Of a stretch of 37,461 nt of DNA, positions 9,757-34,385 are shown piece after piece. Each line of letters opens with the position of its first letter. The stretch's first letter is position 1. The position numbers were made by a program, and so were the translations under genes. The notes beneath the pieces are model-generated. The model saw nothing but the letters and a program-made list of their open reading frames with translations. It had not been told where the DNA came from and did no database searches. Source of the stretch: Octopus bimaculoides (lineage: Eukaryota); the NCBI RefSeq assembly GCF_001194135.2, contig NC_068981.1:57930877-57968337 (forward strand), read 5' to 3'.

Positions 9757-9812
<56 letters not shown>

Positions 9813-9955: not shown

Positions 9956-9972
9956 TGCTATATATACATATA

Positions 9973-10132
9973 TGTAAAAAGCACCCATTACACTCTTGCA
10001 GTAGCTAGCGTTAGGAAGAGCATTCCAGCCATAGAAACCATGCCAAATCAGATTGGAACCTGGTGTGGCTCTCCAGCTTATCAGTTCCAGTCAAACCATC
10101 TAACCCATGCCAGCATGGAAAGCAGACGCTAT

Positions 10133-10176
<44 letters not shown>
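9973..10176 (+). mobile_element. Retroposon 3' tail with (GAT)n
   Basis: Same family as 9454-9756. Confidence 0.7.
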
Positions 10177-10246
10177 ATATATATATTTTGTTTTGAGATT
10201 TGGTTTGCAAGATTCTTTATGTGAGTTCGTGTGTTGAAGCATATTT

Positions 10247-12109: not shown

Positions 12110-14620
12110 GTAAGAAAATTTAACTATTGTCTACCATGATAAATTGTCTCATTTTAATGTTGCTTCTTCGAGTTTTAAAACTTTTTAGAAATCCCAAACA
12201 CGAATTTCTCGGCTTGCCCCTCTCTTTATAATTAATTACATTTCCATCCTGTATATTTTTAAAATTTCGTTATTAATTCAATATATGAATGCTACAGTGC
12301 GATTTTTACTCTTTCGTTCGTTGCATGTTTCTCTAATCAGTCGTTGTATATGCAGCATCAGTGCTCTTAGAATATTGAATAATTCCTTCTTTTAGACAAT
12401 AGTTTGTTTATCTGGCCTCTAAATAATTAACTCAATTTCGAAGTTGTGAAAGCGTTGAAATATTGTCATGAAAAGCTATTACATTTCGACTTTGTAATAT
12501 TCTAATCCAGTTTGAAATATTCTAATTCCTAACAATAAAGCAAAGAACTTAATTTTTATTAAAGGCAGCTTTCACAATTATAAAACTACATTTAATTAGA
12601 GCCACATAACACTTAATCACAGTTAATTATCATGTTTTAGCTATGAACGTATTTAATCTAAAAGTTGATCCACATTTCTGACATAATCTCTACTGTCCCC
12701 AACCTCGAGATGTCCCAAAGTGACACTGACCGTTTTGCATTAAATTACAGAAAAACATTGTTCTCTGTGAGAATTTCCACTGTCAGTTGACTAACATTCA
12801 CCCTTGCACTTTAAACTACAAGCTAACGTGGGACATTAAATTACAAGCTAACGTGGGACATTAAATTACAAGCTCCTTCCTCTTTCAAATCATACCATTT
12901 GCCATAAAAATAATGAATTAACGTAGTTCTAGGTGCCCATAAAAAGATGGTGACGGTAGGAATGGCTTACATCACGCCGTTGTTTAGCCCCTAGGGGACT
13001 AAACAATAATCGTACTGATCGAATATTTCTTCTTTCTGATTTTTCATATTTTTTCATAGTTTAGATTTGAAAGGAGAAAAATTATTACATAAAAACTTAC
13101 ATGATAGTAATGTTAGGTATGTACACACATACAGCGCACAGTCAATCCACAAATAAAGTATGTGTGCGTGCACGTATATAACTGAATATAAATTTCACAA
13201 AACTGAACATTAATCATTTTGTGTTGAGTATTCTGTTTTAATATCTAAAAGATTTTCAAAAATGCTGTTATTATATTTTAGTTAAGGTAGGATGGTCATG
13301 GGCGGAATGTCTTTGATAATAGGTTTGCTGGATGGGGGCTGATCAAGGGGCTAAGCAATAATAACTAACCACAAATATATTGTGTGTGTATATAGGAGTG
13401 TGCGTTAGTATGTACCACTATATTCGAACATGGGTCCAACTTTCTTAACATGAATCCGTAGAAATATTGGTTTCACATTTTGGCGCAAGGCCATCAATTT
13501 CGGGAGTGGGACAAATCAATTACATCGACCCAGTATTCATTTTATTGACCCCAAAAAGATGAAATGCAAAGTCAGCCTGGGTGAATTTGAACTCAGAATG
13601 TAAAGACAGGTGAAATACTGGTAAGCATTTTGTCTGGTGAGCTAACGATTCTGCCAGCTTACCTCCTTAATCCATAGAAATATTGGAAGAACAGAAATTA
13701 TTTGAAAGGAGATTTGAATTTAAAAAAAAAAAATAGAAGAGGATGGTTATGGTTTGAATGCCTTTGATTATAGATCTGCTGGATCAGAGACAATCCAAGA
13801 AAGAAGTGACTCTTTTCTGATACCATGACATGAGTTCAAAAAATGATGTGAGTTCCAGGTAGTAATAATCTATATTAAAAGTGCTATTAATTATCTTTAT
13901 TGTATCTGGGTAGAAAATATATGAAAGAAGCAGTTGGAGCATTTGTTGGATCTGATAGAGATTATAGAGAAATTGTAAAAAAAAAAGAAAATGATATCTT
14001 TGACAGTTTGTCTCAGTTCAAGAGACTGCAATTTGAGTTTATTTAAGTTTGGAATTCTGGATGCAAGAGATATACCTCTAATTTTCATCAGAAATAATGT
14101 TTCTCAACTTGTTTAATCTATTTATACTTTGAAAATAAGATGGGTTCCAAATTTCAGTAGCATACTCTAATTTTGAAAAAAAGCTTAGGAGTGGCTGTGT
14201 GTGGCACCAGGTAAGTGGAAGCCAAAAACAAGGGAAAGAAAAAGCAAGGGGTCTACCCTGGTGGTCGGATGTCTATACTTCAGAAAGCCATTACAAATTG
14301 CATCTGTAATGAGCAATGCTTTAATCGAACATTGTAAATATAGTCAAACTATTATTGTATATTTAAAATTGTAAATATTTAATCGATACAGCTACTTCAC
14401 CGCTTTTATGTTTGTCTGTCCTTGTTCGTTCCCTCTTTGTAATGCCTTTATGGCAAATACTTATGAAATAAAGTAACTTGCTTACGAACCACATGGTTCC
14501 GGGTTCAGTCCCACTGTGTGGCACCTTGGGCAAGTGTCTTCTACTATAGCGTCGGGCCGACCAAAGCCTTGTGAGTGGATTTGGTAGACAGAAACTAAAG
14601 AAGCCCGTTGTATATATGTG

Positions 14621-14651
<31 letters not shown>

Positions 14652-17600
14652 GTATATGTTTGTGTGTTTACATCCCCGTAACCTAGTGGTTCGGCAAAAG
14701 AGACCGATAGAATCAGTACTAGGCTTACAAAGAATAAGTCCTGGGTTGATTTGCTCGACTAAAGGCGATGCTCCAGCATGACCACAGTCAAATGACTGAA
14801 ACAAGTAAAAGAGTATATGACATAGAAATTTTTGTCTTTAGTTAAGAACACTTTGAAAACCATTACCGATATAGATTTTGCTTCTTTTTACAAATTTGCT
14901 GAGAATGTATATTAAATTTTAGATAATTAGAAATAATTACTTTTAAATCCTTAATTGTAGAAAATTCATATTGTTTTTTTAGTTTTGTCACAATCAAATG
15001 TATTGCATTTAGACATGTAATACACATTCAGGATTCTTCACAATAGGTTTAGAGCCATTGAATGTAGGTACTGGTGTACCAGTGGAAATAAAGTTATTTT
15101 AATCAATTGTGTGTTTTTCTTGAAGCATAGCTAACCTATTTACCTCTTAAGTTTGAACTGTACATATGTCTTCAGTTACTGGCATAATTGTTGCTCTCCC
15201 ATTCTAGGTCACATCTGATGAAGCAGACTTATGGTCAAAGGCCTTCTGCCTCTAACAATCCCATCTATTCAGACACAATAACAGCTCCATCTATTCAAAT
15301 ACAGGATATAACAATCCTATTTATTCAAACTTCATTATCAAATTTGTTCGGTTTAAGATTTTAGTTGTGGTTAAAATTATGATTTGAAGATTTGGCTCCT
15401 ATTTCTAGCAGATGAAGCAGTATTGTAGAGCCTCCTTCTTTTGGCTTGAATGGCATCGTTTGATTGTTCATTGATTCCTCTGGGGAATAGATCTCTTATA
15501 GAAACCTTGTCTACCCTGCTATTTAGAAAACTTTAAATGTGTGTAATCAAGATTAACCTTTGCAATTAAAATTTTGAATCATGTACATGACGATGCAGAT
15601 AAACCATGCCAAGTTTGGAATGCCAGTGGGTGTGTTGTTCCATTTGAAGTCTTTCTAAAAACTAACCATTTGCAAACTGTCTTGTTGGAAACTGTGTATG
15701 GTTGTGGTCATATAGTTTGTTGAGCTAAAACATAAAACATTTCTATTGTGAAATGTTTAATCTCTTACTTTCAAGGGCTAACTTTTATCTGGTTCCTGAT
15801 AATCTCATTATTTTTTTCTCTCAATGCAAGTTCTCTGAGGGATTATTTGGCATTGTAAGACTTATAGAAATCCTATGGCTGTTTAGAAATTATTTCAACT
15901 TGGTAGACATGAAATAGAGCCTACCTCTGTCTTGATAAAAAATCAATGGTATTCCAAACATTCCAAAAATAGAAAAAAGTTGAGCTGTAAATTAGGCACC
16001 TTCTCACAGAAGTATTTGTATAATGGTATTAAGAAGCAAATGGAAGATGAGTATACTTGTTGATTATAACATGTATATATTTGAATTATTAGAATGAGGA
16101 AGAGGCAGCTTTTACAGTTTGAATATCTTGCTGATGATAAAAGTTTGATTTAATTTTAGCAAAAGAGCTGAGGGTAAATACCTTTGAGGAGTATTCTGCA
16201 CACAAAATACACAGACTCACTAGTGTGTTATGATGAGCTGGTAATTGCAATTAACTATGAGTTTTCATACATCCTTCAAAGGTTTTTTAAAAACATGATA
16301 AAAAAAAAAAATACAAGGGAGTTGACTTCAATAGTATTAGACCTATCAAGAATTTTGGAAAAATAAGACAATGCAATTTAAGAGCGGACCTTGTCTTTAA
16401 AGCCAACTGATAAAAACAAGATATTCAGACCTTATTAGATTTGGACAAAATATATCTAGCTCAGCTGACAGCACCTAAGTATCTATAGAAATTGAATGGA
16501 AGTAATGATGTTAAAATAATAATGAATTTATTATATACAGTGCTCAGGTGCACTCCAACTCATCAGAAAAAGTAACCAAAGCTGCATGAACAGTACGTAG
16601 GATATGTAAAGGAAGTGAATAGCGAAAAAGTCTTGAAAAAAAAGGAAGAAAGTGGGTGGGTGGTAGTATCAGGTGTACTGTTGGTGAATTTCCGGAAGCA
16701 TGGAAACTTTGAAGGATGTAGTGTTTCAACAGCTAACAACTGTTGGAGGTAATTTATTCCATGCTCCAGCTATTCTGAGTGAAAAAATGTTTCTGAAAGT
16801 CATAGGTACTGTGTTATTTTTTTGATTTTGTAAGCATGTCCATGAGTGTTATAGGCATATGGAATTCATAAAGATGCCCAAAGTTGTTTTTGGAAAGAAG
16901 GTGAATAATCTTGTGTGTTTACCAACATTAGACCAGAAGGGAGCATTCTGTATACTAAATACACATACAAAGAGGGTCTCACAAAGGTAATATAGTGAGT
17001 TGAAAAACTTCAGTTCAGATTTTCCATACAATTGGACAAAGAATATTTAAAATATACAAAAAGAAAAAGAAAAAAGCAAGAGACAACTCCCAGTTGATTT
17101 TAAAGACCCATTCCTACCTGCATTATCTTTATTTCTCCCAAAATTCTATTGGCTGATATTATTGATGTTATCTTCCTTTTCCTTTTGTTTAGATTTTAAA
17201 GACCTCTCGATAGATTTTTTTTGTTTCTTAATTGCATGGATAATTCAGTTGACCAGAGATTTTCATTTCAATCACATATACCATATTTCTTTATTCATAA
17301 GACATTTTTTTTTCCAGTAGAATATCTCTCCAGAAATCCCTTGTATCTTATCATTAAAATGTTAGGTTTGACTACTGAACCCAGTTTTCACTAGAATCCT
17401 AGTCTTGTAGATGTAAGTTTTCAATTACTATTCATATGTAATAAATATATCCCAATATCAATGTTGTAATATATTATAACCAGTAAGAAGTTTACAAGAA
17501 TTTACTAGCAGCAGTAATTGAATGCTATTTGTTTTGTTGGGCTTATGGTGAATTTACAATAATGATGATCTTTGTGCCATTTGTTAACAAGCAGAAATAC

Positions 17601-20600
17601 CCTTGAAATAGATGTCATCTGTTACCAGTCAGTTTAATTCAACTGCTGATAATAATGATCTATGAAACTACATGATAGCAAGCAGAGAACACTAACATGT
17701 ATAATTGATTACAAGCTATGATTTATTGAATGTATAAGCAACATAGCAACTGGATAACCGAGTGACAGTATCGACACCAGATGAAAAAAAAAAACAAAAC
17801 AATTTGTGAAAAGAGAAAACGGAAGGAGACATGAAAGAAAAACAAAAAAACACAGGAACGGAAAAATGTGAACTTCATCATAAACAAAATTCCAGCAACT
17901 AGAGGAAGACATAAAATTATGGAGTATACAGTCTCAACAAAGGTGATAATGTGTAAGACAAGATTGGCTGAAAAGGGGCAGATGAGTTTGCTGAATGTTC
18001 ATTTTGGTGCTACCTTTTTTTGAAGAGGCTTGTATGCATGAGAATGAGGACCTGAATTACAGAGAAGCGACTTGAAGAGTATGAACAAATAATCCTCAAG
18101 TTTTATAAGTAATCAGTATCAGGATGTAAACAAAATTCCAAATAGAGCAAGTTGGCAATATGGATGAATTGGCATTAACATCTGATGGGCTGTCAAATAA
18201 AATTGTTGAAAATAAAAGTGCAAAAACAGTTACTATAAAAACACATGCATTTGAAAGACCTACACTGTTGGAAAGACCTGTATAGTAGGCTTGTTAGAAA
18301 AACAACACGAAGCTCCTGCCTTTTCTATCTTTAAATAAAAACAGTGTCCAAAGAAATCATTCTGTCTATTGCTTTTGTTCATTACACAGGGCGCATTGAT
18401 GAAGTCAGAGTGAAGCTGTAGTTGTATTCAGAGTATCCAAGTGGTTTGTTGAAGAAACCAGCATTACTGGTGCGAGATTAATTTCAAGCTCACAAAACTG
18501 CAGGAACAAGGACAAAAGAAGTTGAGCGACTAAACAAGTAGTTACCCCTCGTCACGTATATGTCAGTGGGTGAAACCATCTTGGGTAATTGTGAGAGTAG
18601 AATTAATGACCAGAATATTTTTTGAAACGTGGAATTCATACTGCAATGGATTGCAGCACAGATATACTTCTTTATGAAAGTAACAATGACCAAGAAACAG
18701 TTAGCAGTAGTGATATTAGTCTAAATAACAGGAATGTTATTTTTTTGCTATCTGTCTTGAGCAATCCTAAGGCACATACATAAGTAGCCAGCCAAACAAC
18801 TAGCATTGATTCACAGATCCATACTGCTGTCTAGTTGAGAACCATATGGCATATTGTGGAAAGCAGAATGTGCCATAACCTATAACCTATCCAGACACCC
18901 ACTGTTTTTTTTTTTACAAACAATTGTTTGTAATAAAGAGTGGGAATCAGGGTAGGTTATGCTCTTTACTTCAAGTCAACCCTGATCCAGACCTATAAAG
19001 ATCTCAGCATTTCAACTGAGAATTTCCATTGTTTAAGATGGCAGGCTGGGGTTTGTGGGGGAATTGATTGCTATGTAAATGATAGTGGTACAGTAGTAAT
19101 GTAAATACCTTTACTGCTCTACTGAATTCCTTTAACTTATCCCTTGTGTCCCATAGCCCACTCTATTAAAAACATTCAGAATATCAACATTTTGAATTTT
19201 ATTGGAAGTTGACAAAATTCAAAGTAGAAACTGACCAATTTATAGAATTCATTCAAAATCTGTATGATTAAGAAGTTTGATTTACAACTGTAAAATTCTG
19301 GGTTCAATCTTCAACCCTACTGTGTGACTATGGTGTCTTCTGTCATAACTTCAGAGTCAACAAAAGCTTTGTGAGTGAAATTTAGTTGACAGAAACTGAA
19401 AGCCAGTTGATGTACTAATAGCCCAAATGTCTGGTAACCTATTTAATAAATAGGTTATCAGGCGTCTTATTTCATGTTTTTTGCTTCAAGTTATATTCAT
19501 GGTGCTGCAAGATGTCAATGACTGTGACACTTAACTTTTAAAATGATTCATTTCACCTTGTTGTAAATAGAGTCTGAGTTCAATTACAGCTGGAGAATAA
19601 AAAAAAAAACTGAACTCCAAAGGGAGGCAATAGTAAATTACCTCAATAATGTGCCAGGTAAGGTATGGAAGAGTTTAATCGTTATGCACAATAATTTACT
19701 GAACTGTGAAGTAATTTCCAAAATGTAGTACCAGTGTGTGGTAGTGAATACAGAAACGTTAAAGTATTGAAGGAAATACTTCATGGGACTTGTCCTGCTT
19801 TTGTGTTCCGAGTTCAAATCCTGCCCCAGCCTGCTAGGGTTGTTGACTTAATTTTTTGCTTGATTTATACACTACCACCTAGTCTTTGAGTATCTTTTGT
19901 AGAGTCTACTCTGTTTCAAGCATTCAAGCCATGTCTCCAGTTTAACAATACCTTTCTCCCTCCTTCACATGAATCTTCCAAGAAGGAAGCTTGACCTTAC
20001 CTTCTTGAATTGAAATATTAAAAAAAAAATCATTGAAATTTTTCTTAAATTGATATTGGAATCATTTGTATTGTTATAGGTTGTACTTTGCTTTTTTTTA
20101 TCTTCATTTATAGTTCCTGGAGATGGAGGTAGCCAGATTAATGCAAGATTGAATAAAAGTGCAACTCCTGTTGTCTACTGTGAGAAGAAAACTAATTATT
20201 ATTATACATTATGGCTGGATCTTACTCAAATAACTGTTGCTCAGGATTGTTTCGTTGACAACATGAGGTAGTTCATCAGATTTTAATCTACTTTATTTCA
20301 TAGATGGTAATATATTAGTATTTCAGATGCATGCTTTAAAGTATTAATAGTGCACATGCGCACACACACTTTATTTAAAAGTTCATTTTTGAATCATATG
20401 ATTTCAGGTTTAGTCCCATTGTGTAGCACTTTGGGCAAGTGTCTTCTAATTTAGCCTCAAGCTGATCAAAGTCTTTTGAGTAGATTTGAGAGACAAAAAT
20501 TGAAGGAAGTGTTGTGTATACTACATTTATGTATCCTTGTCTTGATGTTACATGATAATAGTAAACAAGCATCACTGTTATACAAGAGGTGTCTTAAAAT

Positions 20601-23600
20601 TTGTGATTATATAGGCTCAGGAATGGCTGTGTGGTTAAAAGCTTGCTTCTCATTAGTGTGGCTTTGGGTTCAGTCCTATTGTGCAACAACTTGGGAAATT
20701 ACAGCCCTGGGCTGGCCAATGCCTTATTTGGTTGATGGCAACTGAAAGAAACTCATTGTATATATGCGTGTGTGTGTGAATTTTACAATCGGTACTGAGC
20801 TACAACTACAAACTGCAAGCTATGACACCACTGTTTGTAGCTGAGCTACAAGGGTGATGTTTGTTGATATTTCCTCTTAACAAATTATCCACTAGTTCTG
20901 TACTTTTGAAATTCTCTGGAATAAAAAGACCCTTATTTGAAAAACAGGTAAGGGTTGGTAACAGAAAGAGCATCCAGCTGTAAAAATCTGGCCTCAAATA
21001 CCTCCCCATATAACCCATGCTAGTATGGAAAAGCAAGTTAAAGTGCATGAATGGACAATATATCTATTAGGCAAACAGATGTAAGTGGGTTAGCTACTAA
21101 GATACAATTTATTTAGTCATCTCAAAAGAAGGTATGAAGCTTATCGATTGGTTTGAGACTGACTTTCAGTATTCATTTTGTTCTTATATGCATGTAATAG
21201 TAGACTGTAAAATTAGATTTGATTTAAATTAATTATTAGCTATAATTTGGAAATGAAAGTGTTATCTTTTGTGTTTAGGTTATCTTGTTCTAATTTAGTT
21301 ATGGATTTTATTTTCCATGATTTCGGATGCTATAAAGAATAGCACACAAACCCTGTTGGCATGAAACATCTATATCTAGACAGATAGGAAGACTTAGTAT
21401 ATGTCTTTCTACCTACATAGCTGAAAATATATCTTGAAGTGCGCAATCTATTTCATCATTGTGATCGGCAAAGCACTCTTTAAACACAAAGAGTGCTTAA
21501 CTGTAAAATACTAACTCCAACTATTCCTGTAAACATATGAGTCTATAGAATCCTTCAAAGTGTGCTAGCATGGTAAAAGCATAATCATAATTTAATATGA
21601 AGTAGCTGTATGCTGTCAACTTAATGTGACAGTCCCATGAAGGGAATAATACTACTGTTGTTTAGACCTAGGAAGCTGCACCGCTTCTTGTCAGCCTTGA
21701 CACATTTCCTGTGTCCTTATGTTCACAAGGGGGAGACAAGCACCTCCACCCAGCTAAGCCTGGATCCAGAGACATGTTTCTGAGTTTTTTCTCATCATCA
21801 GTCTGGAGTAGCATGACCTGCTAGTCGAAGATGTCCATCAAGCTCTTGTAAACATATAATAATTCTAGTGAAATACATTCACTGATTTCAAATTTAGAAA
21901 TAATACATTTCTAAATCTCTCAGAGAGATTTATGCAGTAGTGATACAATGAAGTAGTTGTATGCTGTCAACTTAATGTGATAGTCCCATGAAGATAATAA
22001 TACTACTGTTGTTTAGACCTAGGAAGCTGCACCACTTCTTGTTGGCCTTGACACATTTCCAGTGTCCTTATGTTCACAAGGGGGAGACTAGCAGGTCATG
22101 CTACTCCAGACTGATGATGAACAAAGACTCAGAAACATGTCTCTGGATGCAGGCTTAGCTGGGTGGAGGTGCTTGTCTCCCCCTTGTGAACATAAGGACA
22201 CAGGAAATGTGTCAAGGCTGACAGGAAGCAGTGCACCTTCCTAGGTCTAAACAACAGTAGTATTATTCCCTTCATGGGACTATCACATTAAGTTGACAGC
22301 ATACAACTACTTCATCGTATCACTACTGCATAAATCTCTGAGAGATTTAGAAATGTATTATTTCATAATTTAATATATTTAATTTCATACTCAGTATTTG
22401 AAGTTAAATGTGAGTGTGGAATAAATATTAGGGAGATTTGTAATTGAGTTTATTTATATGCACTGTGAAATTGTTAATTGATCTAGAAATCATCATAGCT
22501 AGTGCTGAACTTTCTTTTACAATGCTGTGCTGTCAAAATACAGTTTTCTTAATATTGTTTTGTTTTTTTCTTGTTCTTTGTTTGCAGATTAGTGTATAAT
22601 AATGTAACTCGAAAAACATTAGATTCCCCAGGTGTTTCCATTGATATTCCTGGTTTTGGCAGCACTCCAACAGTAGAATATTTAGACCCTGGGAGAGAAA
22701 GATTCAGTGAGTTAATTCATTCCTTTTAATTATTTAAAAGATGTTTTTCTTAGATTTGATGTTACACATTTGTATTTATTAGTTTCTTTTCATAAGTTAT
22801 TTTCTGATTTTGTATTTTTCAAGTCAACCCTATTTTTGGTTTATGCTAATTGAATTCTTATAAATACACCTGCTGATGCTATTGATTCTCAGTCACTTTC
22901 TCAATATCATTATTCTTAACCAGTGTCCTAAGTTAGCATTAAGTATCTAACAGACTATACTCAATTCTTCAGCTATGAAACAGTCACAAATTAAATATAA
23001 TCCAATTTATCTTTTGTTTTTTTAGCTCTAAGACAGCTCTGATCAATTAGACCTATGATAAAATGTATTTCAGCCCTGTTGATCTGCTTTTAAAATATAG
23101 GCATAGTGTATTCAGGACTACACACCATCCAATATATTTTTCTATTTTTAAGTAAGCTAAATATTTCAAAAGTTGTGTGTGGTGACCTAAGATGTGAAGT
23201 TAGCCAGTCTAGAAGACCTTGAGATATATCATATTTTTAAATGATAATTGATTGCTCAATTTCAGAATTAGTGAATTCCTGCAAAACCCGTTTCTCCAAT
23301 ACTTTATTTTAAAAAAATCTATGTATTATTGCTGGAAAAAGAGAATTTAACAAAAAACACCTCTGTAAAACTATTTTTAAAGTACTTTTTTTCTAGATTC
23401 CATCGTTGTTATCTTCAATAGTTAATATTTGCTAATCATCATTGTTTTCTTAACTTATTCATTAAATTTTATTCATCAAGCTTCATTAATGTCTGTTTTC
23501 CATGCTGGCATTGGTTGGATAGTCTAACAAGCTGCATCAAGCTCCAATGTCTCTTTACAAATTTTTTCTTTGGTATTTCCATTATTTCATTAACTGTGTT

Positions 23601-25941
23601 AGAAGATAGATTACTGAGTCTTAGTGTGTTACAGATAGTTTATCTTGAGAAATCCAGGTACATAAAATTACAAATCAATTCTAAAAACTGTCAGCATTAT
23701 GATGCCAATTATTTTTCAATTAAATATATCAGAGCAAGTAGAGAATATAATGTACTGGCTATAACAAGGTTTAGGTTTACACCATTGAATTATGATATGA
23801 ACACCTTTAAATCAATATTAAAAGTTATGGTTTACATACAATATAATTCATTTTCTACTTCAAGGTTCCTGGTAAAGCATAAAATCACACTTGTAAAGAA
23901 GTTACAAGTAGAGTGTATGCCTATAGTAGATAGCAATTGTTAAACTAATTCAGCATTAACTGAACATTTCATTTCTTTCTGGCAAAAAGTTCTGTTTCAA
24001 ACATACAGCAACATTTTCTAAATTTGCAAAGATCTATTTCAATATAATTAAAGCATTTCATTGAAATTAAAGCCAATTTTTACTGTTTCTTTTAGCTACA
24101 TACTACTATTATATTGTTAAAGAACTTGTCAAACTGGGATTAACACGAAATGTATCTATTAGAGGAGCACCATATGATTTTAGACGTTCTCCGAGTAAGT
24201 GTCATTTTTTCATCTGTTTTAAGTATCTATGTTAGAAATACTGGTGCATGATTAGCTTGTAAAATGTATACTAAGATACATGTTACTTTAACTGATGTGT
24301 GACCTTAGCTTATGCTACATTAAAAAGAAAGGAATTATCTACAAACTTGCAGAAGTAAATATTGCATAACTTTTTTGTCAACTCCCACTTTCAAAATCTA
24401 AAGAAGGCCTGTATCTGTATGTGTGAAGGTTTATAAGGTTGATAATATGGCTTTGGATGTTTTAATTAAACCTGTGATAGGCACATCTGCTTAAATAAGT
24501 CCCGATGAATAGGTTTTTAATTAAACCTATTCAATGGGACTCATTTAACTGGGAAATAAAACTGAGATAAGCTTCAATTTAATAAGTCTGGTTCAAAAGG
24601 GAAAGTTTTGAATAACTATTGACTTCTGTTTCTAATTTTGTTTTTTTTTAACTTCCAGATGAATTTCAAAACTATTTTAAGAACTTTAAATCACTGGTTG
24701 AAGAAACTTACAACAAAAGCAATGGATCTAGAGTTACACTGATTGCACACAGCATGGGTTGTCCAACTATGCTATACTTTCTCAATTCTCAGACACAGGC
24801 TTGGAAAGATAAATATATTAACTGTTTTATCACAATTTCTGGAGTTTGGGGTGGTGCTGCAAAAACCCTCCGAGTCATGGCGTCAGGTAAGAAATAGTAA
24901 TTGTCAACATCCTTGAATTTTTTTATAGTATGTTTTAAAAAATAACGAAGTATTTAGTAATTATATTGTCTAAGAACAGAAGAAATTTTGATTAAATTAT
25001 TTTTGTTATTATCACATTTTCTCTTATAGAAGATTATTGTAGCAAATATATCTTTCATTTTACTGGGTGACTTTAGATTGAGAACGATAATTGCTGCCTA
25101 ACATTTCTAGAATATTTGCTTGAAATGATCAAAACATTGCAAGGTTTGCCTATTGGCAACAGTTAATTTAACTTAGATCTACATACAACTCTCTGGCCAC
25201 GGTTGAATAGATAACATATTTACTTATCATCATTGTCATCTCTATTGACATGGATTGAATGATACAGAGCTATATTTCTCAGTGTCACTAGTAAAAACAA
25301 TGCAAAAGTTCATACTATTATCTAAATGATGAATGTTCTTTTCTACTTTATTAAAAAAAATTTTATTAAAATATTTTTGTTTTTATTCATATTCAGGAGA
25401 TAATCTTGGTATTTTCATATTGAAAGATAATATTGTTCGGAAATACCAACGTACTGCAACTTCAACAGCTTGGCTTATGCCATATGATACTTTCTGGAAA
25501 CCTGATGAAATCCTTGTTTCCCATCCTGGCCGCAATTATACTGTTAAAGATTACAAACAGTTTTTTGAAGATTTGAATTTTACAACTGGCTTTGAAATGC
25601 GTAAAGACACAGAAAATCTTGTGAAAGACCTCCATCCACCTGGAGTGGAAGTTCATTGTATACATGGAATCAATGTATCTACACCAGCTAGCTTTGTTTA
25701 TGGTAAAGGATTTCCTAATGTTCAACCAACGACAATAAATGGAGATGGAGATGGGACAGTAAATGTACAAAGTTTACATGGTTGTCTTCGATGGTCAAAA
25801 CAACAAAAACAGCCTGTTTACCATCATACTTTAGAAGGAGCAGACCATTTGAAAATATTGAAAAATCAGACATTAATTGATCTAATTTCCCAAATAGTAA
25901 CCAAAAAATCTAAAAGCCCTAAAATCAAATTGAAAAAGTAA
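12019..25941 (+). CDS. PLA2G15: Group XV (lysosomal) phospholipase A2 / LCAT-family acyltransferase, 6 coding exons, 411 aa: join(12019..12109,20114..20267,22588..22706,24096..24194,24659..24886,25397..25941)
   Basis: The spliced frame is open over 1236 nt (91+154+119+99+228+545). All 5 introns are GT..AG, with phases 1,2,1,1,1. Family motifs: PVILVPGDGGSQ, RGAPYDFRRSP, IAHSMG (Ser186), GDGDGTV (Asp349), GADHL (His381). From memory, the exon layout resembles vertebrate PLA2G15/LCAT; orthology versus LCAT needs a tree. Confidence 0.93.
12811..12874 (+). repeat. 25-bp tandem repeat, about 2.6 copies
   Basis: ttaaa(c/t)tacaagctaacgtgggaca units at 12811 and 12836, partial at 12861. Confidence 0.92.
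13471..13668 (-). mobile_element. tRNA-derived SINE with Meta/MESC-like central domain and 18-bp TSD
   Basis: Reverse-complement homolog of 27369-27582. TSD aatcc(g/a)tagaaatattgg at 13453-13470 and 13669-13686. Confidence 0.8.
13750..14178 (-). mobile_element. CR1/L2-like LINE C-terminal fragment
   Basis: Minus strand KLEYATEIWNP, then ..LNKLKLQSLELRQ (ORF 13897..14088). Confidence 0.6.
14186..14815 (+). mobile_element. tRNA-derived SINE whose head is split by about 270 bp of other sequence
   Basis: Head taggagtggctgtgtg at 14186. The SINE resumes at about 14473 (gtaacttgcttacgaaccacatggttccgggttcagtccc) and runs to the tail at 14815. Confidence 0.75.
16150..16480 (+). mobile_element. Highly decayed CR1/L2-like RT fragment
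   Basis: ..ILQRFFKNMIK..; DFNSIRPI and SRILEKI resemble the NYRPISL..SKILEK motif. Confidence 0.35.
16520..17040 (-). mobile_element. CR1-like LINE 3' end
   Basis: Minus strand reads ..YITFVRP.. and ..HFQKHFFTQ.. with frameshifts, resembling the end of CR1 ORF2, then a UTR. Confidence 0.5.
17740..18340 (+). mobile_element. Decayed pogo/Tigger-type transposase (CENP-B HTH and start of DDE_1)
   Basis: KFQQLEEDIKLW..VSTKVIMCK; FAECSFWCYLFLKRLVCMRMRT; LEEYEQIILKFYK; GNMDELALTSDGLSNKIVENKSAKTVTIKTHAFE, in mixed frames. Confidence 0.62.
20114..20267 (+). CDS. PLA2G15: PLA2G15-like exon 2
   Basis: Acceptor tttatag. (V)PGDGGSQINARLNKSATPVVYCEKKTNYYYTLWLDLTQITVAQDCFVDNM(R), with the two conserved lid-region Cys. 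Donor AG|GTAGTT. Confidence 0.93.
20395..20770 (+). mobile_element. Two decayed tRNA-SINE fragments in intron 2
   Basis: tttagtcccattgtgtagcactttgggcaagtgtcttc (about 20408) and aggaatggctgtgtggttaaaagcttgct...gggttcagtcc (about 20617). Confidence 0.6.
21765..21807 (-). ncRNA. Minimal type I hammerhead ribozyme
   Basis: Minus strand: UCCAGA-CUGAUGA-UGAG(AAAAAA)CUCA-GAAA-CAUGUC^UCUGGA. 6-bp stem I, 4-bp stem II, palindromic ACAUGU stem III, GUC cleavage triplet. Confidence 0.85.
22105..22147 (+). ncRNA. Minimal type I hammerhead ribozyme (sense to the host pre-mRNA)
   Basis: UCCAGA(22105-10)-CUGAUGA(22111-17)-UGA(ACAAAGAC)UCA-GAAA(22132-35)-CAUGUC^(cut after 22141)-UCUGGA(22142-47). Confidence 0.82.
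22588..22706 (+). CDS. PLA2G15: PLA2G15-like exon 3
   Basis: Acceptor tttgcag. LVYNNVTRKTLDSPGVSIDIPGFGSTPTVEYLDPGRERF. Donor A|GTGAGT. Confidence 0.93.
24096..24194 (+). CDS. PLA2G15: PLA2G15-like exon 4
   Basis: Acceptor ttttag. TYYYYIVKELVKLGLTRNVSIRGAPYDFRRSP. Donor A|GTAAGT. Confidence 0.93.
24491..24548. other. 58-nt near-perfect hairpin in intron 4
   Basis: 26-position stem with 23 Watson-Crick pairs, 1 G.U and 2 mismatches; 6-nt loop ttaatt. Confidence 0.8.
24659..24886 (+). CDS. PLA2G15: PLA2G15-like exon 5 (nucleophile elbow)
   Basis: Acceptor cttccag. Contains IAHSMGC (Ser codon 24751-24753), QAWKDKYI and WGGAAKTLRVMAS. Donor G|GTAAGA. Confidence 0.95.
25397..25941 (+). CDS. PLA2G15: PLA2G15-like exon 6 (catalytic Asp and His, stop)
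   Basis: Acceptor attcag. Matches ORF 25333..25941 from GDNLG onward. GDGDGTV at 25741-25761, His codon 25846-25848, TAA at 25939-25941. Confidence 0.95.
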
Positions 25942-26960
25942 AAAATGAATGCCTGAATAGACTTTATTAAAACATCCCTCTCAAAAGCACATTTTTTTCT
26001 TATTGTGGCTGTCGAAGCTTAAAAATGCTTGCAATTTATTTTTGTTTGTATTTTTCTGCTGTTTTTTTTATGGTGTGACATGTCTTTTATGGTACATTTA
26101 TCTGACTTGTATAATTGTTGAAAATTAATGAATTTGTATATTGGCATGTACTGAACTGTTTCTACTATTCCATTTTAAAGAGAAATTCAGTTTTTAGTGA
26201 GCTCCTTGTCACTTAGTTTGTTTTTCAAGCCAATATTCTCTTCAGTTACTTTTTTCTAAGTCAAGTTTTTGTCTTCATGTTCTGAGCTGAAAAGTTTTCT
26301 AAATTTAGATATTGAATTTAAGTTTCATTTCTTTTAGGTATTTATCTTGACTATTTGCAGTTCTGTTGAATCCTAATGACTTGCTGCATTATAAGCAATT
26401 TTTATGAATAGATTTTATGTCAATAGTTGGAAACTTTTTCATAATACCAAAACACATCAAGATTATATTGTTATATTTCTATTAAAATATAAGAAAATAA
26501 TTAATTTTGCTTCTATGCTTCAGGAAATTAAAAATTATAAACTGGGTAAGTTATTCTGGTAATCTGTAATTTTTTTATGAACAGTTGAACATGAAAATAA
26601 GATTTTGGTTATTGACTTTTTGCAGTTTTATGTGCATTTAAATAACATTGGTTTACAATTATTTTGTAAATGTGTTGCTTATCCAAACAATCATATCATT
26701 TATTAAGTGTAAAATGACCATATTTCATTAAAATGGAAGCTATAGAGACTCTTAATTTTAACTTGAACCTCCAGCTTAGATGGTTTCACAAAGAAATTAT
26801 GCTGAGCTGTTAGATGAAATGCGATGTATTTCCTGTAATTTTATTTTAAAATTTTTGATTTGACTTGCCAAGTTTGCTCCCTAATGTCACAAAAATAGTC
26901 TGAACTTTATTCATCAAGCTTTACTTTATACCTGTGGACCTTATTGGCTTTAAGATGATG

Positions 26961-29789: not shown

Positions 29790-32326
29790 ATTGTAGAGTT
29801 AACAGAGAGTGTGAAAAGTTCAAACTGGATTAGTTAATGCCTACATATTCAAGTGCCTGATATTTACTCAGTGACTAACTGTAGAAAAAGATGCTGAAGT
29901 AAGAACAAGAATTCTCGCTAAGCTGGAACAAAACCAAGTTGTAACCTTACAACAAGTGTGAAAAGAGTGTGAAAGAATTGTAAATCTAAGACATGAAAAT
30001 TGAACATAAAGATTGCTCCCAAGTGAAACAAGTGTGAAATAAGCAGAATAGAAATCAAGTGTGTACTAAAATACAGTACAAACAGGACAAAAATCAGGAA
30101 ACAAACCTGTGTTTTACATGTGGAGGTGGAGGTCTACACCTGAGGAAAAAACTGCTCCTTTATGAAAGTGGAATGTTTCATGGAAAGATTGGACACGTAA
30201 AAGCACATTGTAAAACCAAGATGACAAAACATTGGAACAAAGAAAATAGAGTAAACGAGATGTTGTTGAAAGAAAATGGTAATGTAACAAAGAGGAAATA
30301 TGAAAATTGAAAATATAAGAGTAAAAATGCAGTTAAACACTGGAAGTGATATTACCATTGTGAATGAAGAAACTTGGAAGTATATCAGAGAGCCAAAATT
30401 AAGTAAGTCTGCAAAAGTAGTACACGATGTTACAGGTAAAAGATTGTATTTTGTAGGTGAATTTGTGTGTAATATGACATTTCGTGACCGAATGAAAACA
30501 GCAAAAGTATGTCTGTTAAAAGATTCAGTAACTTTGTTCAGTACAGGGTGGGTGGAACTGTTGAGCAACTGCAATAAAAAAAATATCCTCACACGAAATA
30601 ATGTGACTATGCTACTAGCATTTTTGGGGATTAGTAAATTGCTACCAAACTTATATTTTCAATATACACAATGTAATGGTCCCGCTAAATGATTTGTTAA
30701 AGAAAAATGCAAAATGGTGCTGGACTGATAAGTGCCAGAAGGCATTTGACAAATTAAAAAACATTTCAACGTTGAACTATTGTTAAAGCATTTTGATCTG
30801 AAGCTGGATATTATCTTGGCTACAAATGCGAGTGATTATGGTGTAGGAGCACTGCTTCTGTATAAATATGACAATGGGAGTAAAAAGGTTATAGCCCATG
30901 CCTCACGATCGTTATTACCAGCAGAAAGGAACTATAGCCAAATAGAAAAGAAAACATTAGGAATTATATTTCGTATGTGTATTTGATGTGCAAGGTTTAA
31001 TAGTTGTAGGAATTATATTTGGTGCAAAAAAATTCCATAGATTTAATCATGGAAGAAGTTTCTGTCTACAAACGGATCATCACCCACTACTGTCAGTATA
31101 CGATTCTAAAAAAAGGAATACCACCACACAGAGCTAATGGACTACAGCGATGGGGCACTGCATTATTGAATTATGATTTCAAAATGGAATATTTACCATA
31201 AAAAAAAACTAGGGCATGCGGTTAGTCTGTCCAGACTGATACTGAAACACTGTGAGCCATTCAAAGATACGGTAATCGCAGCATTAAGATCAGAAGGTGA
31301 AATAAAAAATGTAATGTGGAATGTGGAACACAAATTACCAGTGATCCTAGAAGACATAAAATGAAATACAGAAAAGAACAAATTCATAACAGAAATGAAA
31401 AAATTACTGTGGACAAGAAAAGTAAACAGGAACAGGATTGGTGCAAAACAAAATCAAGACATGGACCTACACTCAATTTGTGATAGTCTACTGAAACACT
31501 GCAAAAGAAAATAATGTTGAGGGAATTCCATGTTGGACATCTTGGTATTTCGAGGATGAAAGCTTTAATGCATAGATATGTGTACTGGCCAAAAATGGAT
31601 AGAGAAATTGAAAATTTAGTGAAAGGCTGCAGAGAATGTGCTCTAACAGCAAAATTAAAGACGATAAAGAGTGAACCTTGGCCATAAGTAGATGTTCAGT
31701 GGTCAAGACTACACATTGATTTCATTGGTCCCTTAAATGGTTCATACTACTTAGTCGTGGTAGATAGTTTCTCTAAATGGCCAGGAATTTTTGTGTGTAA
31801 AAAGCCAAGCTCCTCAGTAACGACAAACTTTCTACCTGAGTTGTTTGTGAAATTTTGCGTTTCCAGACACTATAGTGTCTGATAATGGAATGCAATTTGT
31901 GTCTTTTGAGTTTAAAAAGTTCTGTAAAACGTTCACTGAAGAAAATGTAACTACTGCATCATACCATCTTGTCAATACGTTCAAGAGAGCTCTAAGAAAG
32001 TCAAATAAGGAAGTTATGGATGAGGTAGCTCTATAACAATTCCTAAGAGTATACTAAGTGCCACCAATTCCAAATACACCAGCAGGTATGTTACCAGCGG
32101 AGCTGGTGTTTGTGAAGAAAATAAAATCAGTCTTCGACAAATTGCTACTTGGTAAAAAAAAAAAAAAACGAAAAATTGCAATGATAGAGCAAGATTTTTC
32201 AAAATTGGTGAAAATGTATTTATTAGGGCATATATGAACAGAAAACAAAGTTTGGAAGACAGCGTGATTACCAAACGCATAGGAAAAATGCTATACTTGG
32301 TAAAAGGAAGAAAATGGGTATATAAG
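29790..32326 (+). mobile_element. Decayed Ty3/Gypsy (K02A2.6-like) retrotransposon interior: gag, zinc knuckle, protease, RT thumb, RNase H, integrase
   Basis: gag RILAKLEQ; CFTCG..GHVKAHC; protease LNTGSDITIV; RNase H LATNASDYGVGA..AERNYSQIEK; integrase GISRMKAL..YWPKM..GCREC, RLHIDFIGP, IVSDNG. Many stops and frameshifts; no LTRs recognised. Confidence 0.9.
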
Positions 32327-32376
32327 CACTAGCGTAGCTAGAGTGTGTACCACTTGGGGCGGCCCTTCCGTTTGCC
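32327..32376 (+). mobile_element. Possible hAT-type terminal sequence between the Gypsy and RTE elements
   Basis: cactagcgtagctagagtgtgtaccacttggggcggccc resembles CAGTGGCGTAGC-type hAT termini. Confidence 0.35.
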
Positions 32377-34027
32377 ATCGCTATACTTGTTGTCAACCCT
32401 CACCTTACTGACAGCATACTTGTACAGCTCTTACCAACCACTCGTCTATCCCCGGTTTCCACATTGACCACCAGATAAGGGATCGGGGGACTCTGTCAAA
32501 GGCTTTCTCCAAGTCAACAAAAGCCAAGTACAGAGGTTTATCTTTGGCTAGGTATTTCTCCTGCAGTTGTCTTACCAGAAATATAGCATCAGTGATGATT
32601 CTGTCTGGTATAAAACCAAACTGCATCTCATCTAGACTAACTCTCTCCTTGATTAGTTGGGCTTTGATCCTCTCTGTAACTTTCATCATCTGATCCAAGA
32701 ATCTGATACCCCTGTGGTTATTTCTATCTAAAGCATCACCTTTACCCTTGTAGCAGTTGACTATGGTGCTGCTACACCAGTCATTGGGTATGACTCCTTC
32801 ATGAACTACCTGATTTATGATGCAGGTGACAAGACCATAACCCACACCGCCAGCTATTTTAAGCATCTCAGCGGTGATTCCTGATGGGCCAGGTGCTTTC
32901 CCTGTCTTCATATCCTTAATTGCTTTATCTACCAGGGTATTGTCAATTTGGGTAGCTGGTCCCTCAATTGGGTCAACCTTTGGCAGACTCTCCTCCTCCC
33001 ATTCATTCTCCACATTCAACAGTCTTTCATAATGGCATCTCCAAGCCTCTTTCTTTGCAGAATCATTAAATGGAAAGGCACCATCATCCATATGGACACA
33101 TTTCTCTCCTATGACATCACGATTTTCACTCACATGCTGTCTTGCAATCTGAAATACTTCAATTCTTCAGTCCTCATGTTGCTGAACATTGGCAAACATC
33201 TTTTCTGCTACTCCCTTGGCTAAATATACCTGCCTCCTATCTTCCCTTTTGGCTATCTGATACATTCTCCTGCCACCCCCCACTCTTCCAGGCCTTCCGA
33301 GCCTGTTTCTTTACTCGAATGGCTCTGTCTACAGTTTTGTTCTACCACCATAGTACCCTAGGTCTGGACGGGACTTTGTACCAGCCACAGATTTGGTCTG
33401 TGGCACTCAGCAAGCTGTCTTGCTGGAATTCCCAGCTGCCTTCTATGTCACAGGACTGTAGCTCCTCCCTATCATCAAATTTCTCGGTAAGGACATCCCT
33501 AAATCACTAACCATGTGAAGAGTTCTTAAGCTTCCAAGTCCTTCTTTTCCAGATTGGTCTGCTTTCTGGCATCCTTCTGACCTCCAGGCTAAAGTCACTA
33601 ATAACTAGTCTATGCTGGGGTGGGGGTTACATTCTTCACCAGCGAGGGTCTTTGTATTTAAGAGCAACCATGCATCCCATTGTCTGGTGTAAATGAAATC
33701 AATCTGGCTAGCAGAGTCACCTGATTGATAGGTTATCAGGTGGCTAGCTGGTTTCCTGAAGTTGGTGTTGCAGATCAATAGGTTATTTGCATCGCAGAAC
33801 TCCAGGAGCCTAGTTCCCTCTTCATGTTTGATACCAACTCTATGGCTCCCATGTATACCATGGAAGATACCAGGTTGCTGTCTGACATGCCCATGAAAAT
33901 CTCCAGCCACAAAGATGAGATCATTGTCACTCATCTTTGAGGTAGCCTGCAGAAAAATATCATAAAAGTGATCCTCCTGTTCATTTGGTCAGCCCACTTG
34001 TGGGGCATAGGCAGAGATAATTGTAGC
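32377..34027 (-). mobile_element. RTE-clade LINE fragment (APE endonuclease C-terminal part, linker, RT N-terminal half)
   Basis: ORF 33605..33934 (VAGDFHGHV, SQIDFI) and ORF 32405..33133 (KAPGPSGI, MQFGF, AFVDLEKAFDRV). Broken mid-RT at about 32377; 5' part lost in the N-gap. Confidence 0.92.
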
Positions 34028-34385
34028 NNNNNNNNNNNNNNNNNNNNNNNNNNNNNNNNNNNNNNNNNNNNNNNNNNNNNNNNNNNNNNNNNNNNNNNNN
34101 NNNNNNNNNNNNNNNNNNNNNNNNNNNNNNNNNNNNNNNNNNNNNNNNNNNNNNNNNNNNNNNNNNNNNNNNNNNNNNNNNNNNNNNNNNNNNNNNNNNN
34201 NNNNNNNNNNNNNNNNNNNNNNNNNNNNNNNNNNNNNNNNNNNNNNNNNNNNNNNNNNNNNNNNNNNNNNNNNNNNNNNNNNNNNNNNNNNNNNNNNNNN
34301 NNNNNNNNNNNNNNNNNNNNNNNNNNNNNNNNNNNNNNNNNNNNNNNNNNNNNNNNNNNNNNNNNNNNNNNNNNNNNNNNNNNNN

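What the first reader, a model, noticed from the sequence alone, without database searches (positions are those of the whole stretch)
21765..22147. Two oppositely oriented minimal hammerhead ribozymes in intron 2 of the PLA2G15-like gene
Seen: the full core (CUGAUGA, GAAA, GUC) with a perfect 6-bp stem I (UCCAGA/UCUGGA) occurs on the + strand at 22105-22147 and on the - strand at 21765-21807. Within the motifs, all 3 differences between the copies fall in stem/loop II; core, stem I and stem III are identical. Known: type I minimal hammerheads with a palindromic stem III (here ACAUGU) occur in Penelope-like elements and metazoan non-LTR retrozymes, and cleave mainly as dimers. Inference: this is a ribozyme-bearing mobile family, possibly uncatalogued in this lineage, and one copy is sense to the host pre-mRNA. 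Caveats: pair 10.1-11.1 is U-A rather than the usual G-C, and there is only one copy per strand here.
Basis: partly seen in the sequence, partly recalled or inferred. Interest (0 to 1): 0.9.

Follow-up and report, generated by a model that had tools for sequence, protein, structure and literature searches.

The report
Hammerhead-bearing retroelement insertion in an intron
The two opposite hammerhead-ribozyme motifs are real, but both belong to one 764-bp insertion of a small non-coding, ribozyme-carrying retroelement in an intron, an already described kind of animal mobile element.

Summary
Both motifs sit exactly where reported: 22105-22147 (+) and 21765-21807 (-). Each has a complete hammerhead core, a 6-bp helix I, a 3-4-bp helix II and the palindrome ACAUGU as helix III. 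No such motif appeared in 3000 shuffled windows. They are not independent. Both lie in a block spanning 21599-22362, flanked by an exact 14-bp duplication (TCATAATTTAATAT). The block is built from a 351-nt non-coding unit: 1.4 units in tandem on the minus strand, joined head-to-head to 0.8 unit on the plus strand. A partial tandem with an adjacent inverted copy is the published signature of Penelope-like-element integration. Unit size, low GC, long target duplication and a self-paired fold match metazoan "non-LTR retrozymes". The block lies in the GT..AG intron 20269-22587 of an LCAT/PLA2G15-like gene, and the plus copy is sense to that gene. Three caveats apply. Rfam hammerhead models do not detect the motif. 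Pair 10.1-11.1 is U-A. No further copies could be retrieved, so covariation and copy number are untested. At this locus cleavage is unlikely: there is one ribozyme per strand, and a roughly 230-bp hairpin can sequester it. Verdict: a probable new member of a known kind, of modest interest.

The parts
21585..21598 (+). Left copy of the target-site duplication, TCATAATTTAATAT
   Evidence: It is an exact 14-mer, repeated at 22363-22376, and sits exactly at both homology breakpoints of the block. Only 2 isolated non-microsatellite 14-mer pairs 300-1500 bp apart exist in the whole window.
21599..21826 (-). Copy A: unit positions ~1-228 of the 351-nt element, carrying a hammerhead. It is the downstream member of the minus-strand partial tandem.
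   Evidence: It forms inverted repeat I1 with 22086-22315 (230 nt, 96%) and direct repeat D1 with 21948-22093 at spacing 351.
21765..21807 (-). Hammerhead motif of copy A. Helix II is 4 bp (UGAG/CUCA) and loop 2 is AAAAAA. Predicted cleavage lies between 21771 and 21770.
   Evidence: Found by the descriptor scan. The MFE fold contains helices I and II. Its best Rfam hit is Hammerhead_3 at 12.5 bits against a gathering score of 48.5.
21827..22088 (-). Copy C: unit positions ~90-351. It is the upstream partial unit of the minus-strand tandem and has no hammerhead, because the inversion junction truncates it.
   Evidence: It matches by direct repeat D1 (94%) and inverted repeat I2 with 22170-22345 (93%).
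22086..22088 (.). Head-to-head inversion junction, with GAC microhomology shared by both arms
   Evidence: Taken from the alignment of the three copies and the breakpoints of I1 and I2.
22086..22362 (+). Copy B: unit positions 1-277, in inverted orientation relative to A and C. It carries a hammerhead and is sense to the host gene.
   Evidence: Supported.
22105..22147 (+). Hammerhead motif of copy B. Helix II is 3 bp plus an A/C mismatch. Predicted cleavage lies between 22141 and 22142.
   Evidence: Supported. Rfam gives no hammerhead hit even at E<=10 on an 86-nt slice.
22363..22376 (+). Right copy of the target-site duplication, TCATAATTTAATAT
   Evidence: Supported.
20269..22587 (+). Host intron (GT..AG) of the LCAT/PLA2G15-like gene that contains the insertion. 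The flanking exons end at 20268 and start at 22588.
   Evidence: The exons were placed by tblastn with LCAT-family proteins. Splice sites and the reading frame across the junction (..DNM-R-LVYNN..) were checked.

Best explanation
One insertion (21599-22362) of a small, non-coding retroelement that carries a hammerhead. It is of the metazoan 'non-LTR retrozyme' / Penelope-like-element-dependent kind. Its unit is 351 nt, 38% GC, has no ORF longer than 52 codons, and carries one type-I hammerhead at unit positions 20-62. Inferred life cycle, taken from the described family: tandem genomic copies are transcribed as multimers. Neighbouring hammerheads pair through the palindrome ACAUGU into a double hammerhead with a 6-bp helix III and cut after GUC. 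This releases 351-nt RNAs with 5'-OH and 2',3'-cyclic-phosphate ends. A tRNA ligase (RtcB) circularises them, and a retroelement reverse transcriptase copies the multimeric or circular RNA into new sites. Here, integration produced 1.4 tandem units on the minus strand plus an adjacent inverted 0.8 unit, flanked by a 14-bp target duplication. That is why the two ribozymes face opposite ways. At this locus the ribozymes are probably inert passengers. Each strand has only one, so no cis dimer can form. In the host pre-mRNA the sense copy can be locked into a roughly 230-bp duplex with the inverted copy. Shown: the motif, the repeat anatomy, the target duplication, the intron position and the folds. 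Inferred: catalysis, circular RNA, and which reverse transcriptase mobilised it.
For: The core is complete and helices I and II appear in both copies. A motif with helix I of at least 6 bp and a short palindromic helix III occurred 0 times in 3000 shuffles. The 351-nt period, the inverted arms and a third partial copy are shown. An exact 14-bp duplication sits at both breakpoints and is essentially unique in the window. Cofolding predicts the double hammerhead with a 6-bp ACAUGU helix III as the minimum-energy dimer: B+B -32.6 against -28.2 kcal/mol for two monomers, A+B -29.9 against -27.1. The circularised unit folds to -89.9 kcal/mol, z = -2.5, and helix I continues into a long rod. The literature matches. 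Metazoan retrozyme units are 150-450 bp, have under 50% GC, TSDs longer than 4 bp and self-paired circRNAs, and mussel units are 350-390 bp (PMC7229834). Dual hammerheads 100-700 bp apart on opposite strands have been reported (PMC4209133). PLE insertions are partial tandems with an adjacent inverted 5'-truncated copy (PMC8557442). Retrozymes have been proposed to derive from PLE pLTRs, and about 43% overlap introns in Xenopus (bioRxiv 10.64898/2026.07.22.740005). A weak base of helix II has precedent: axolotl HHR_Amex2 has a U-U there and still cleaves.
Against: Rfam hammerhead models give nothing at gathering threshold. On short slices the best score is 12.5 bits against 48.5. Pair 10.1-11.1 is U-A, whereas G-C is highly conserved in natural hammerheads (PMC4209133). 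Helix II is only 3-4 bp, and the plus copy has lost one pair without compensation. Cofolds also show competing pairings of the core CUGA with UCAG. Only this one insertion is available. No other copy was found in the window, in two metagenome scans and one viral scan, among called ORFs of the protein collection, or in three related or other invertebrate loci. The multi-copy family, covariation and a PLE partner are therefore unshown. No PLE RT/GIY-YIG was seen among the TE-like ORFs scanned. The tandem part holds only one ribozyme.
Confidence: 0.72

Rival explanations
1. The element and insertion are as described, but a LINE reverse transcriptase mobilised it by twin priming on an uncleaved multimeric transcript, not a Penelope-like element. 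Both nicked target ends primed cDNA synthesis on one RNA of about 2.5 units, which gave the head-to-head inversion.
For: An inversion with both 3' ends facing outward, a 14-bp TSD and 2-3-nt microhomologies at the junction and ends are classic twin-priming features (the general mechanism is from my own knowledge of L1 biology). LINE APE+RT fragments are present in the window, while no PLE RT is. The three copies differ by 4-7%. This would follow directly if they were successive diverged units of one multimeric template.
Against: There is no poly(A) or simple-repeat 3' tail at either end. [quoted passage not shown] Retrozymes co-occur with PLEs and are related to them.
Confidence: 0.15
2. The hammerhead-like motif is a chance resemblance inside an ordinary non-catalytic repeat, such as a SINE or satellite fragment. 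Nothing is cleaved.
For: Rfam models do not recognise it. The 10.1-11.1 pair is U-A and helix II is short and A/U-rich. The monomer fold is no more stable than shuffles (z -0.3 to -1.9). There are only two non-independent copies and no covariation. Extrapolating the rates, roughly 1e-4 per 37 kb, gives a handful of chance motifs in a Gb-sized genome.
Against: All 13 core positions are canonical, the triplet is GUC, helix I is a perfect 6 bp and helix III is palindromic. This combination occurred 0 times in 3000 shuffles. The motif also sits in exactly the type of element in which such ribozymes are known: a unit of about 350 nt, a tandem/inverted insertion, a long TSD and a self-paired fold.
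Confidence: 0.1
3. The block is a DNA-level foldback element or MITE, or a local inverted duplication or assembly artefact. It is not a retroelement.
For: The inverted repeats are long (230 and 176 nt) and give a -508 kcal/mol hairpin. The assembly contains N gaps.
Against: The inverted repeat is not terminal: the right arm runs 47 nt further into the unit than the left, and there is an internal 351-nt tandem. A 14-bp TSD is longer than in cut-and-paste families (my own knowledge). The arms differ by 4-7%, which is unlike a foldback read artefact.
Confidence: 0.03

Closest known systems
Metazoan non-LTR retrozymes (Cervera & de la Pena 2020, PMC7229834), for example the mussel 350-390-bp and axolotl 330/350-bp repeats
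   Same: Both have a type-I hammerhead in a non-coding unit of about 350 nt, tandem arrangement, GC below 50%, a TSD longer than 4 bp and a self-paired predicted fold. Both have a short palindromic helix III that implies dimeric cleavage, as in amphibian retrozymes. A non-G-C base of helix II has precedent in the U-U of HHR_Amex2.
   Different: Here there are only 1.4 tandem units plus an inverted 0.8 unit, with one ribozyme per strand. The 10.1-11.1 pair is U-A. RNA circles, activity and genomic copy number are unknown. There is no detectable sequence similarity to anything retrievable.
Penelope-like elements and their pLTR 'min-HHRs' (PMC4209133; PMC8557442)
   Same: The insertion architecture matches: a partial tandem plus an adjacent inverted truncated copy, variable ends, and paired hammerheads 100-700 bp apart on opposite strands. 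The palindromic 15.2-16.2/helix III also matches.
   Different: There is no RT/GIY-YIG ORF, because the unit is only 351 nt. Helix II is 4 bp rather than 6-8 bp. There is no unpaired base between A9 and 10.1, and G10.1-C11.1 is absent.
Newt satellite 2 and Schistosoma Sm-alpha hammerheads (classic type-I motifs in repetitive DNA)
   Same: Both have a 6-bp helix I followed by an internal loop, a 4-bp helix II with a 6-nt A-rich loop, a very weak helix III and a dimer mechanism (PMC6155905).
   Different: The loop nucleotides that make the tertiary contacts could not be verified here. The stem II sequence and the 10.1-11.1 pair differ.
Conserved intronic hammerheads of amniotes (RECK, CTCL, DTNB)
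   Same: Both are type-I hammerheads in the sense orientation inside an intron of a protein-coding gene.
   Different: The amniote motifs are single, ultraconserved, domesticated copies. This one is a young TE insertion, with copies 93-96% alike and the TSD intact, and there is no evidence of conservation.

Membership tests
Hammerhead ribozyme | Conserved core: C3 U4 G5 A6 N7 G8 A9, G12 A13 A14, A15.1-U16.1, and H17 at the cleavage site | tested here: met
   Both copies read CUGAUGA ... GAAA ... GUC with an A2.1-U1.1 pair.
Hammerhead ribozyme | Three helices around the core | tested here: inconclusive
   Helix I is a perfect 6 bp. Helix II is 4 bp in copy A and 3 bp in copy B. Helix III is only 1-2 bp in a monomer but 6 bp (ACAUGU) in the predicted dimer.
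Hammerhead ribozyme | G10.1-C11.1 pair at the base of helix II | tested here: not met
   The pair is U-A in both copies. It is described as highly conserved in PMC4209133. Axolotl HHR_Amex2, which has U-U there, still cleaves.
Hammerhead ribozyme | Score at or above Rfam's gathering threshold for a hammerhead covariance model | tested here: not met
   There are no hits at gathering threshold. The best score is Hammerhead_3 at 12.5 bits against 48.5 on copy A, and copy B gives none.
Hammerhead ribozyme | Compensatory changes in the helices across copies | tested here: inconclusive
   Only two copies exist, with 3 differences. One is an uncompensated loss of a helix II pair.
Hammerhead ribozyme | Site-specific self-cleavage | not testable with these tools
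   This needs in vitro transcription of monomer and dimer constructs.
Metazoan non-LTR retrozyme | Type-I hammerhead inside a 150-450-bp unit arranged in tandem | tested here: met
   The period is 351 nt, and the span 22093->21599 on the minus strand equals 1.4 units. Only one complete ribozyme lies in the tandem part.
Metazoan non-LTR retrozyme | Non-coding, no LTR, GC below 50% | tested here: met
   GC is 38%. The longest stop-to-stop ORF is 52 codons. Those ORF translations have no protein homologues. PBS and PPT motifs were not searched for.
Metazoan non-LTR retrozyme | Target-site duplication longer than 4 bp when present | tested here: met
   An exact 14-bp duplication sits at both breakpoints.
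Metazoan non-LTR retrozyme | Highly self-paired unit-length (circular) RNA | tested here: met
   The circular MFE is -89.9 kcal/mol, 63% of bases are paired, and z = -2.5 (3 of 200 shuffles fold as well). This is a prediction only.
Metazoan non-LTR retrozyme | Multi-copy genomic family expressed as linear and circular RNA | not testable with these tools
   The source genome is not in the accessible collections. No other copy was found.
Penelope-like element (autonomous) | ORF encoding a PLE-type RT with a GIY-YIG endonuclease between pseudo-LTRs | tested here: not met
   The block has no ORF. The TE ORFs scanned in the window show LINE-type RT/endonuclease and LTR-retrotransposon RNase H/integrase domains, with no GIY-YIG.
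Penelope-like element (insertion signature) | Partial tandem plus an adjacent inverted truncated copy | tested here: met
   Read on the minus strand, the order is inverted copy B, then partial copy C, then copy A. This matches the description in PMC8557442.
C/D-box snoRNA (considered because of weak Rfam hits) | C box and D box (CUGA) with a terminal stem in an RNA of at least about 60 nt, scoring above threshold | tested here: not met
   Scores are 13-15 bits against a gathering score of 35. They are driven by UGAUGA alone, and no D box is present.

The most novel reading that the evidence does not exclude
The sense-strand hammerhead has a natural U10.1-A11.1 variant base pair. In one alternative fold it sits in the 76-nt apical loop (22094-22169) of a 176-bp hairpin. 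In this reading it is active in the host pre-mRNA, so the insertion acts on the LCAT/PLA2G15-like gene. It could do so by ribozyme cleavage of the intron, or by the long intronic dsRNA feeding RNA editing or small-RNA pathways against the element family.
Probability: 0.05. Interest if true: 0.55.

Novelty: new member of a known kind. Interest (0 to 1): 0.25.

Why it matters
If confirmed, this adds one more lineage and one more ribozyme variant (U-A at 10.1-11.1) to the catalogue of hammerhead-bearing retroelements of animals. It is also a clean, TSD-bounded example showing that these short elements integrate with the tandem/inverted signature of Penelope-like elements. That bears on the current proposal that animal retrozymes are non-autonomous PLE derivatives. 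It does not open a new mechanism. For annotation, the practical message is that the two 'ribozymes' are one TE insertion in an intron, and that this insertion also creates a very long intronic hairpin.

Tried and rejected
1. Rfam was run on the whole window at gathering threshold, at E<=10 on 1.2 kb, and on two 86-nt slices. No usable hammerhead hit appeared. The weak C/D snoRNA-like hits were rejected as UGAUGA noise.

2. I looked for more copies in several ways, all without result. These were blastn of the unit against the window, two metagenome scans and one viral scan with core-plus-helix patterns, and a protein search with the unit's spurious ORF translations to catch called ORFs in other assemblies. 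I also scanned three fetched loci: a related-species contig, an Argonauta hians locus and an ENA contig.

3. An empty-site test in the related species failed. The only contig obtained (L001, 82% identical) starts at window position 24049, downstream of the insertion. The window's own genome is not on record.

4. Organism identification is not settled. The best LCAT hit is an unnamed Logan contig at 88% amino-acid identity. The named hits are an annelid (Ridgeia, 54%) for LCAT and an octopod (Argonauta, 53%) for a LINE RT. The run accession appears in no paper.

5. A tRNA-like origin or Pol III A/B boxes were checked with ARAGORN, which finds nothing.

6. Alternative registers of CUGAUGAUGA that would restore G10.1-C11.1 were rejected, because they leave an extra base before G12.
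Full report
**Observation.** The plus strand at 22105-22147 reads UCCAGA CUGAUGA UGAACAAAGACUCA GAAA CAUGUC UCUGGA. The minus strand at 21765-21807 reads UCCAGA CUGAUGA UGAGAAAAAACUCA GAAA CAUGUC UCUGGA.

A type-I hammerhead descriptor that I wrote finds exactly these two motifs in the 37.5-kb window and nothing else. It requires CUGANGA, helix II of at least 3 bp, GAAA, helix III of at least 2 pairs, UH, and helix I of at least 4 bp.

All core positions are canonical: C3-A9, G12-A14, A15.1-U16.1 and C17, with a GUC triplet and an A2.1-U1.1 pair. Helix I is a perfect 6 bp. Helix II is UGAG/CUCA in the minus copy and UGA/UCA in the plus copy. Helix III is the palindrome ACAUGU, which can be read as 2 bp with a 2-nt loop or as 1 bp with a CAUG tetraloop.

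The predicted cleavage sites are 22141/22142 (+) and 21771/21770 (-).

**Chance.** I ran 3000 dinucleotide-preserving shuffles of the window.

| Descriptor | Hits per window |
|---|---|
| Relaxed | 0.066 |
| Helix I of at least 6 bp | 0.008 |
| Short palindromic helix III | 0.001 |
| Both of the last two | 0 in 3000 |

One such motif in a random 37-kb window is therefore unlikely by chance. A handful would still be expected in a genome of gigabase size. The second occurrence adds no independent weight, because the two motifs are copies of each other.

**Rfam.**
- There are no hits at gathering thresholds over the whole window.
- There is no hammerhead hit at E<=10 over 21400-22600.
- On 86-nt slices, the minus copy gets only a 12.5-bit Hammerhead_3 alignment against a gathering score of 48.5. 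The plus copy gets nothing.
- The other weak hits are C/D-box snoRNA models at 13-15 bits. They latch on to UGAUGA, there is no D box, and I reject them.

The published surveys of Penelope-type and minimal hammerheads used RNAmotif descriptors rather than covariance models (PMC4209133, PMC8557442). The Rfam negative therefore lowers the claim of membership but does not abolish it.

**Anatomy of the locus.** Repeat analysis gives three relationships:
- an inverted repeat, 21597-21826 against 22086-22315 (230 nt, 96%);
- a second inverted repeat, 21918-22093 against 22170-22345 (176 nt, 93%);
- a direct repeat, 21597-21742 = 21948-22093, at a spacing of 351 nt.

Read in the ribozyme's sense, there is a 351-nt unit with the hammerhead at unit positions 20-62. 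The minus strand from 22093 down to 21599 carries 1.4 tandem units. These are copy C (unit ~90-351, no ribozyme) followed by copy A (unit 1-228, with ribozyme). The plus strand from 22086 to 22362 carries copy B (unit 1-277, with ribozyme). Copy B is joined head-to-head to copy C at a GAC microhomology (22086-22088).

The whole block is bracketed by an exact 14-nt direct repeat, TCATAATTTAATAT, at 21585-21598 and 22363-22376. Both copies sit precisely at the homology breakpoints. Among all 14-mer pairs 300-1500 bp apart in the window, only two isolated non-microsatellite pairs exist, and this is one of them. I therefore take it as a target-site duplication of a single 764-bp insertion.

The unit is non-coding, since its longest stop-to-stop ORF is 52 codons. 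It is 38% GC, and no tRNA-like sequence was found.

**Host context.** LCAT-family exons (PF02450, PLA2G15-like) lie on the plus strand at about 20113-20268, 22588-22696, 24095-24196, 24652-24888 and 25393-25938. The intron 20269-22587 has GT..AG ends, and the reading frame runs correctly across it.

The insertion lies 1330 nt downstream of the donor site and 225 nt upstream of the acceptor site. Copy B and its hammerhead are sense to the gene.

**Folds.**
- As monomers, both motifs fold with helices I and II, but helix III is not stable. Their energies are not unusual (z -0.3 and -1.9).
- Two molecules cofold into the classical double hammerhead with a 6-bp ACAUGU helix III. This is the minimum-energy dimer for B+B and A+B. 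A+A instead prefers a duplex through the palindrome CUGGAUCCAG, and a competing CUGA/UCAG pairing is visible.
- The 351-nt unit, circularised at the cleavage site, folds to -89.9 kcal/mol with 63% of bases paired, z = -2.5. Helix I continues into a long imperfect rod. This is the general look of retrozyme RNAs.
- A transcript through the locus (21580-22380, plus strand) folds into a duplex of about 230 bp, at -508 kcal/mol and z = -44. In that fold the sense hammerhead is paired to its inverted copy.
- A kinetically plausible local alternative pairs C with the downstream part of B. That would leave the sense hammerhead in a 76-nt apical loop (22094-22169).

**Interpretation.** The features match two described and related things.

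First, metazoan non-LTR retrozymes. These carry a type-I hammerhead in tandem units of 150-450 bp, with low GC, TSDs longer than 4 bp and self-paired circular RNAs of 170-400 nt. Mussel units are 350-390 bp. Amphibian ribozymes have a 1-bp helix III with a palindromic tetraloop and cleave as dimers. One abundant axolotl family has a U-U mismatch at the base of helix II and still cleaves (PMC7229834).

Second, the integration signature of Penelope-like elements. These insert as partial tandems with an inverted 5'-truncated copy immediately adjacent (PMC8557442). Paired hammerheads 100-700 bp apart on opposite strands have been reported (PMC4209133). [quoted passage not shown] It finds about 43% of them overlapping introns in Xenopus.

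By the definitions in PMC4209133, this motif has a 6-bp helix I, a 4-bp helix II, a 6-nt loop 2 and a short palindromic helix III. That makes it closer to the 'canonical' metazoan type-I layout than to the PLE 'min-HHR'. The latter has a 7-8-bp helix II, an unpaired base after A9 and no helix III.

I therefore read the finding as one insertion of a retrozyme-type element. The opposite orientation of the two ribozymes is a by-product of how the element integrated.

**Mechanism.** The motif, unit, tandem/inverted structure, TSD, intron position and fold predictions are shown. The following steps are inferred from the family:
1. Multimeric transcripts are cut by dimerising hammerheads.
2. RtcB-type ligation circularises the unit-length RNAs.
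3. A retroelement RT copies the multimeric or circular RNA into new sites.

Which RT acted is open. The architecture favours a PLE, but LINE twin priming on an uncleaved multimer is a live rival. The window holds LINE fragments, and no PLE RT or GIY-YIG was seen among the ORFs scanned. In addition, the 4-7% differences among the three copies could reflect successive diverged units of one template.

At this locus the ribozymes are most likely inert. Each strand has a single copy, helix III is weak, and the inverted repeat competes for pairing.

**Limits.** I could not obtain any other copy of the unit.
- There is none elsewhere in the window.
- There is none in two metagenome scans and one viral scan.
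- There is none among called ORFs of the protein collection.
- There is none in three fetched loci.
- The source genome is not in the accessible collection.
- The only related-species contig (82% identical) stops short of the insertion site.

Family size, covariation, the empty site and 'uncatalogued' status are therefore untested, and catalysis is unproven. The organism is an AT-rich invertebrate-type genome. Its nearest named hits are an annelid LCAT and an octopod LINE RT, each at about 53-54% identity, so it remains unidentified.

**Verdict.** This is a probable new member of a known kind, namely a hammerhead-bearing, PLE-type non-autonomous retroelement. Interest is modest.

Noticed in passing
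window 21597-22345: The insertion creates near-perfect inverted repeats of 230 nt (96%) and 176 nt (93%). The intronic transcript is predicted to form a hairpin of about 230 bp (-508 kcal/mol, z = -44). This is a potential substrate for RNA editing or small-RNA pathways.
   Followed up: partly
window 21760-21769: In copy A, the helix I 3' strand runs into a perfect 10-nt palindrome, CTGGATCCAG. In cofolds it drives an alternative intermolecular duplex. Copy B has CTGGATGCAG at 22143-22152.
   Followed up: partly
window 1-353 and 32408-33988 (minus strand): There are two fragments of one LINE family, 82% identical over 353 nt, with RVT_1 and an AP-type endonuclease-RT domain. The best named homologue of the RT ORF is from Argonauta hians (53%).
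   Followed up: partly
window 30038-32330 (plus strand): A degraded LTR-retrotransposon pol region. RNase H and integrase zinc-binding domains are split over several short ORFs by frameshifts and stops.
   Followed up: partly
window 1348-1725, 9761-9976, 14471-14811, 20391-20520; also 4314-4496, 5083-5272, 9556-9772, 9972-10186: There are two families of short interspersed repeats, 72-81% identical between copies, often next to microsatellites. One fragment lies in the same intron as the hammerhead block.
   Followed up: no
window 36399-37010 (minus strand): A 204-codon open frame containing a CRICRQNGETVWHITSQC motif has no Pfam hit. It looks like the C-terminal part of another retroelement protein.
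   Followed up: no
window 35668-35776 and 35967-36075: A 110-nt direct repeat (82%) of unknown nature. It contains the only other isolated exact 14-mer pair in the window.
   Followed up: no
window 2029-2141 and 34028-34385: Runs of N (assembly gaps). The window is otherwise rich in (TA)n, (CA)n, (GA)n and trinucleotide microsatellites, and about 34% GC.
   Followed up: no
L001 (Logan SRR11869394 contig), 24-2334, against window 24049-26404: A genomic contig from a related, unidentified species is 81.6% identical across the last three LCAT-like exons and their introns. The encoded last exon is 88% identical at the protein level.
   Followed up: partly
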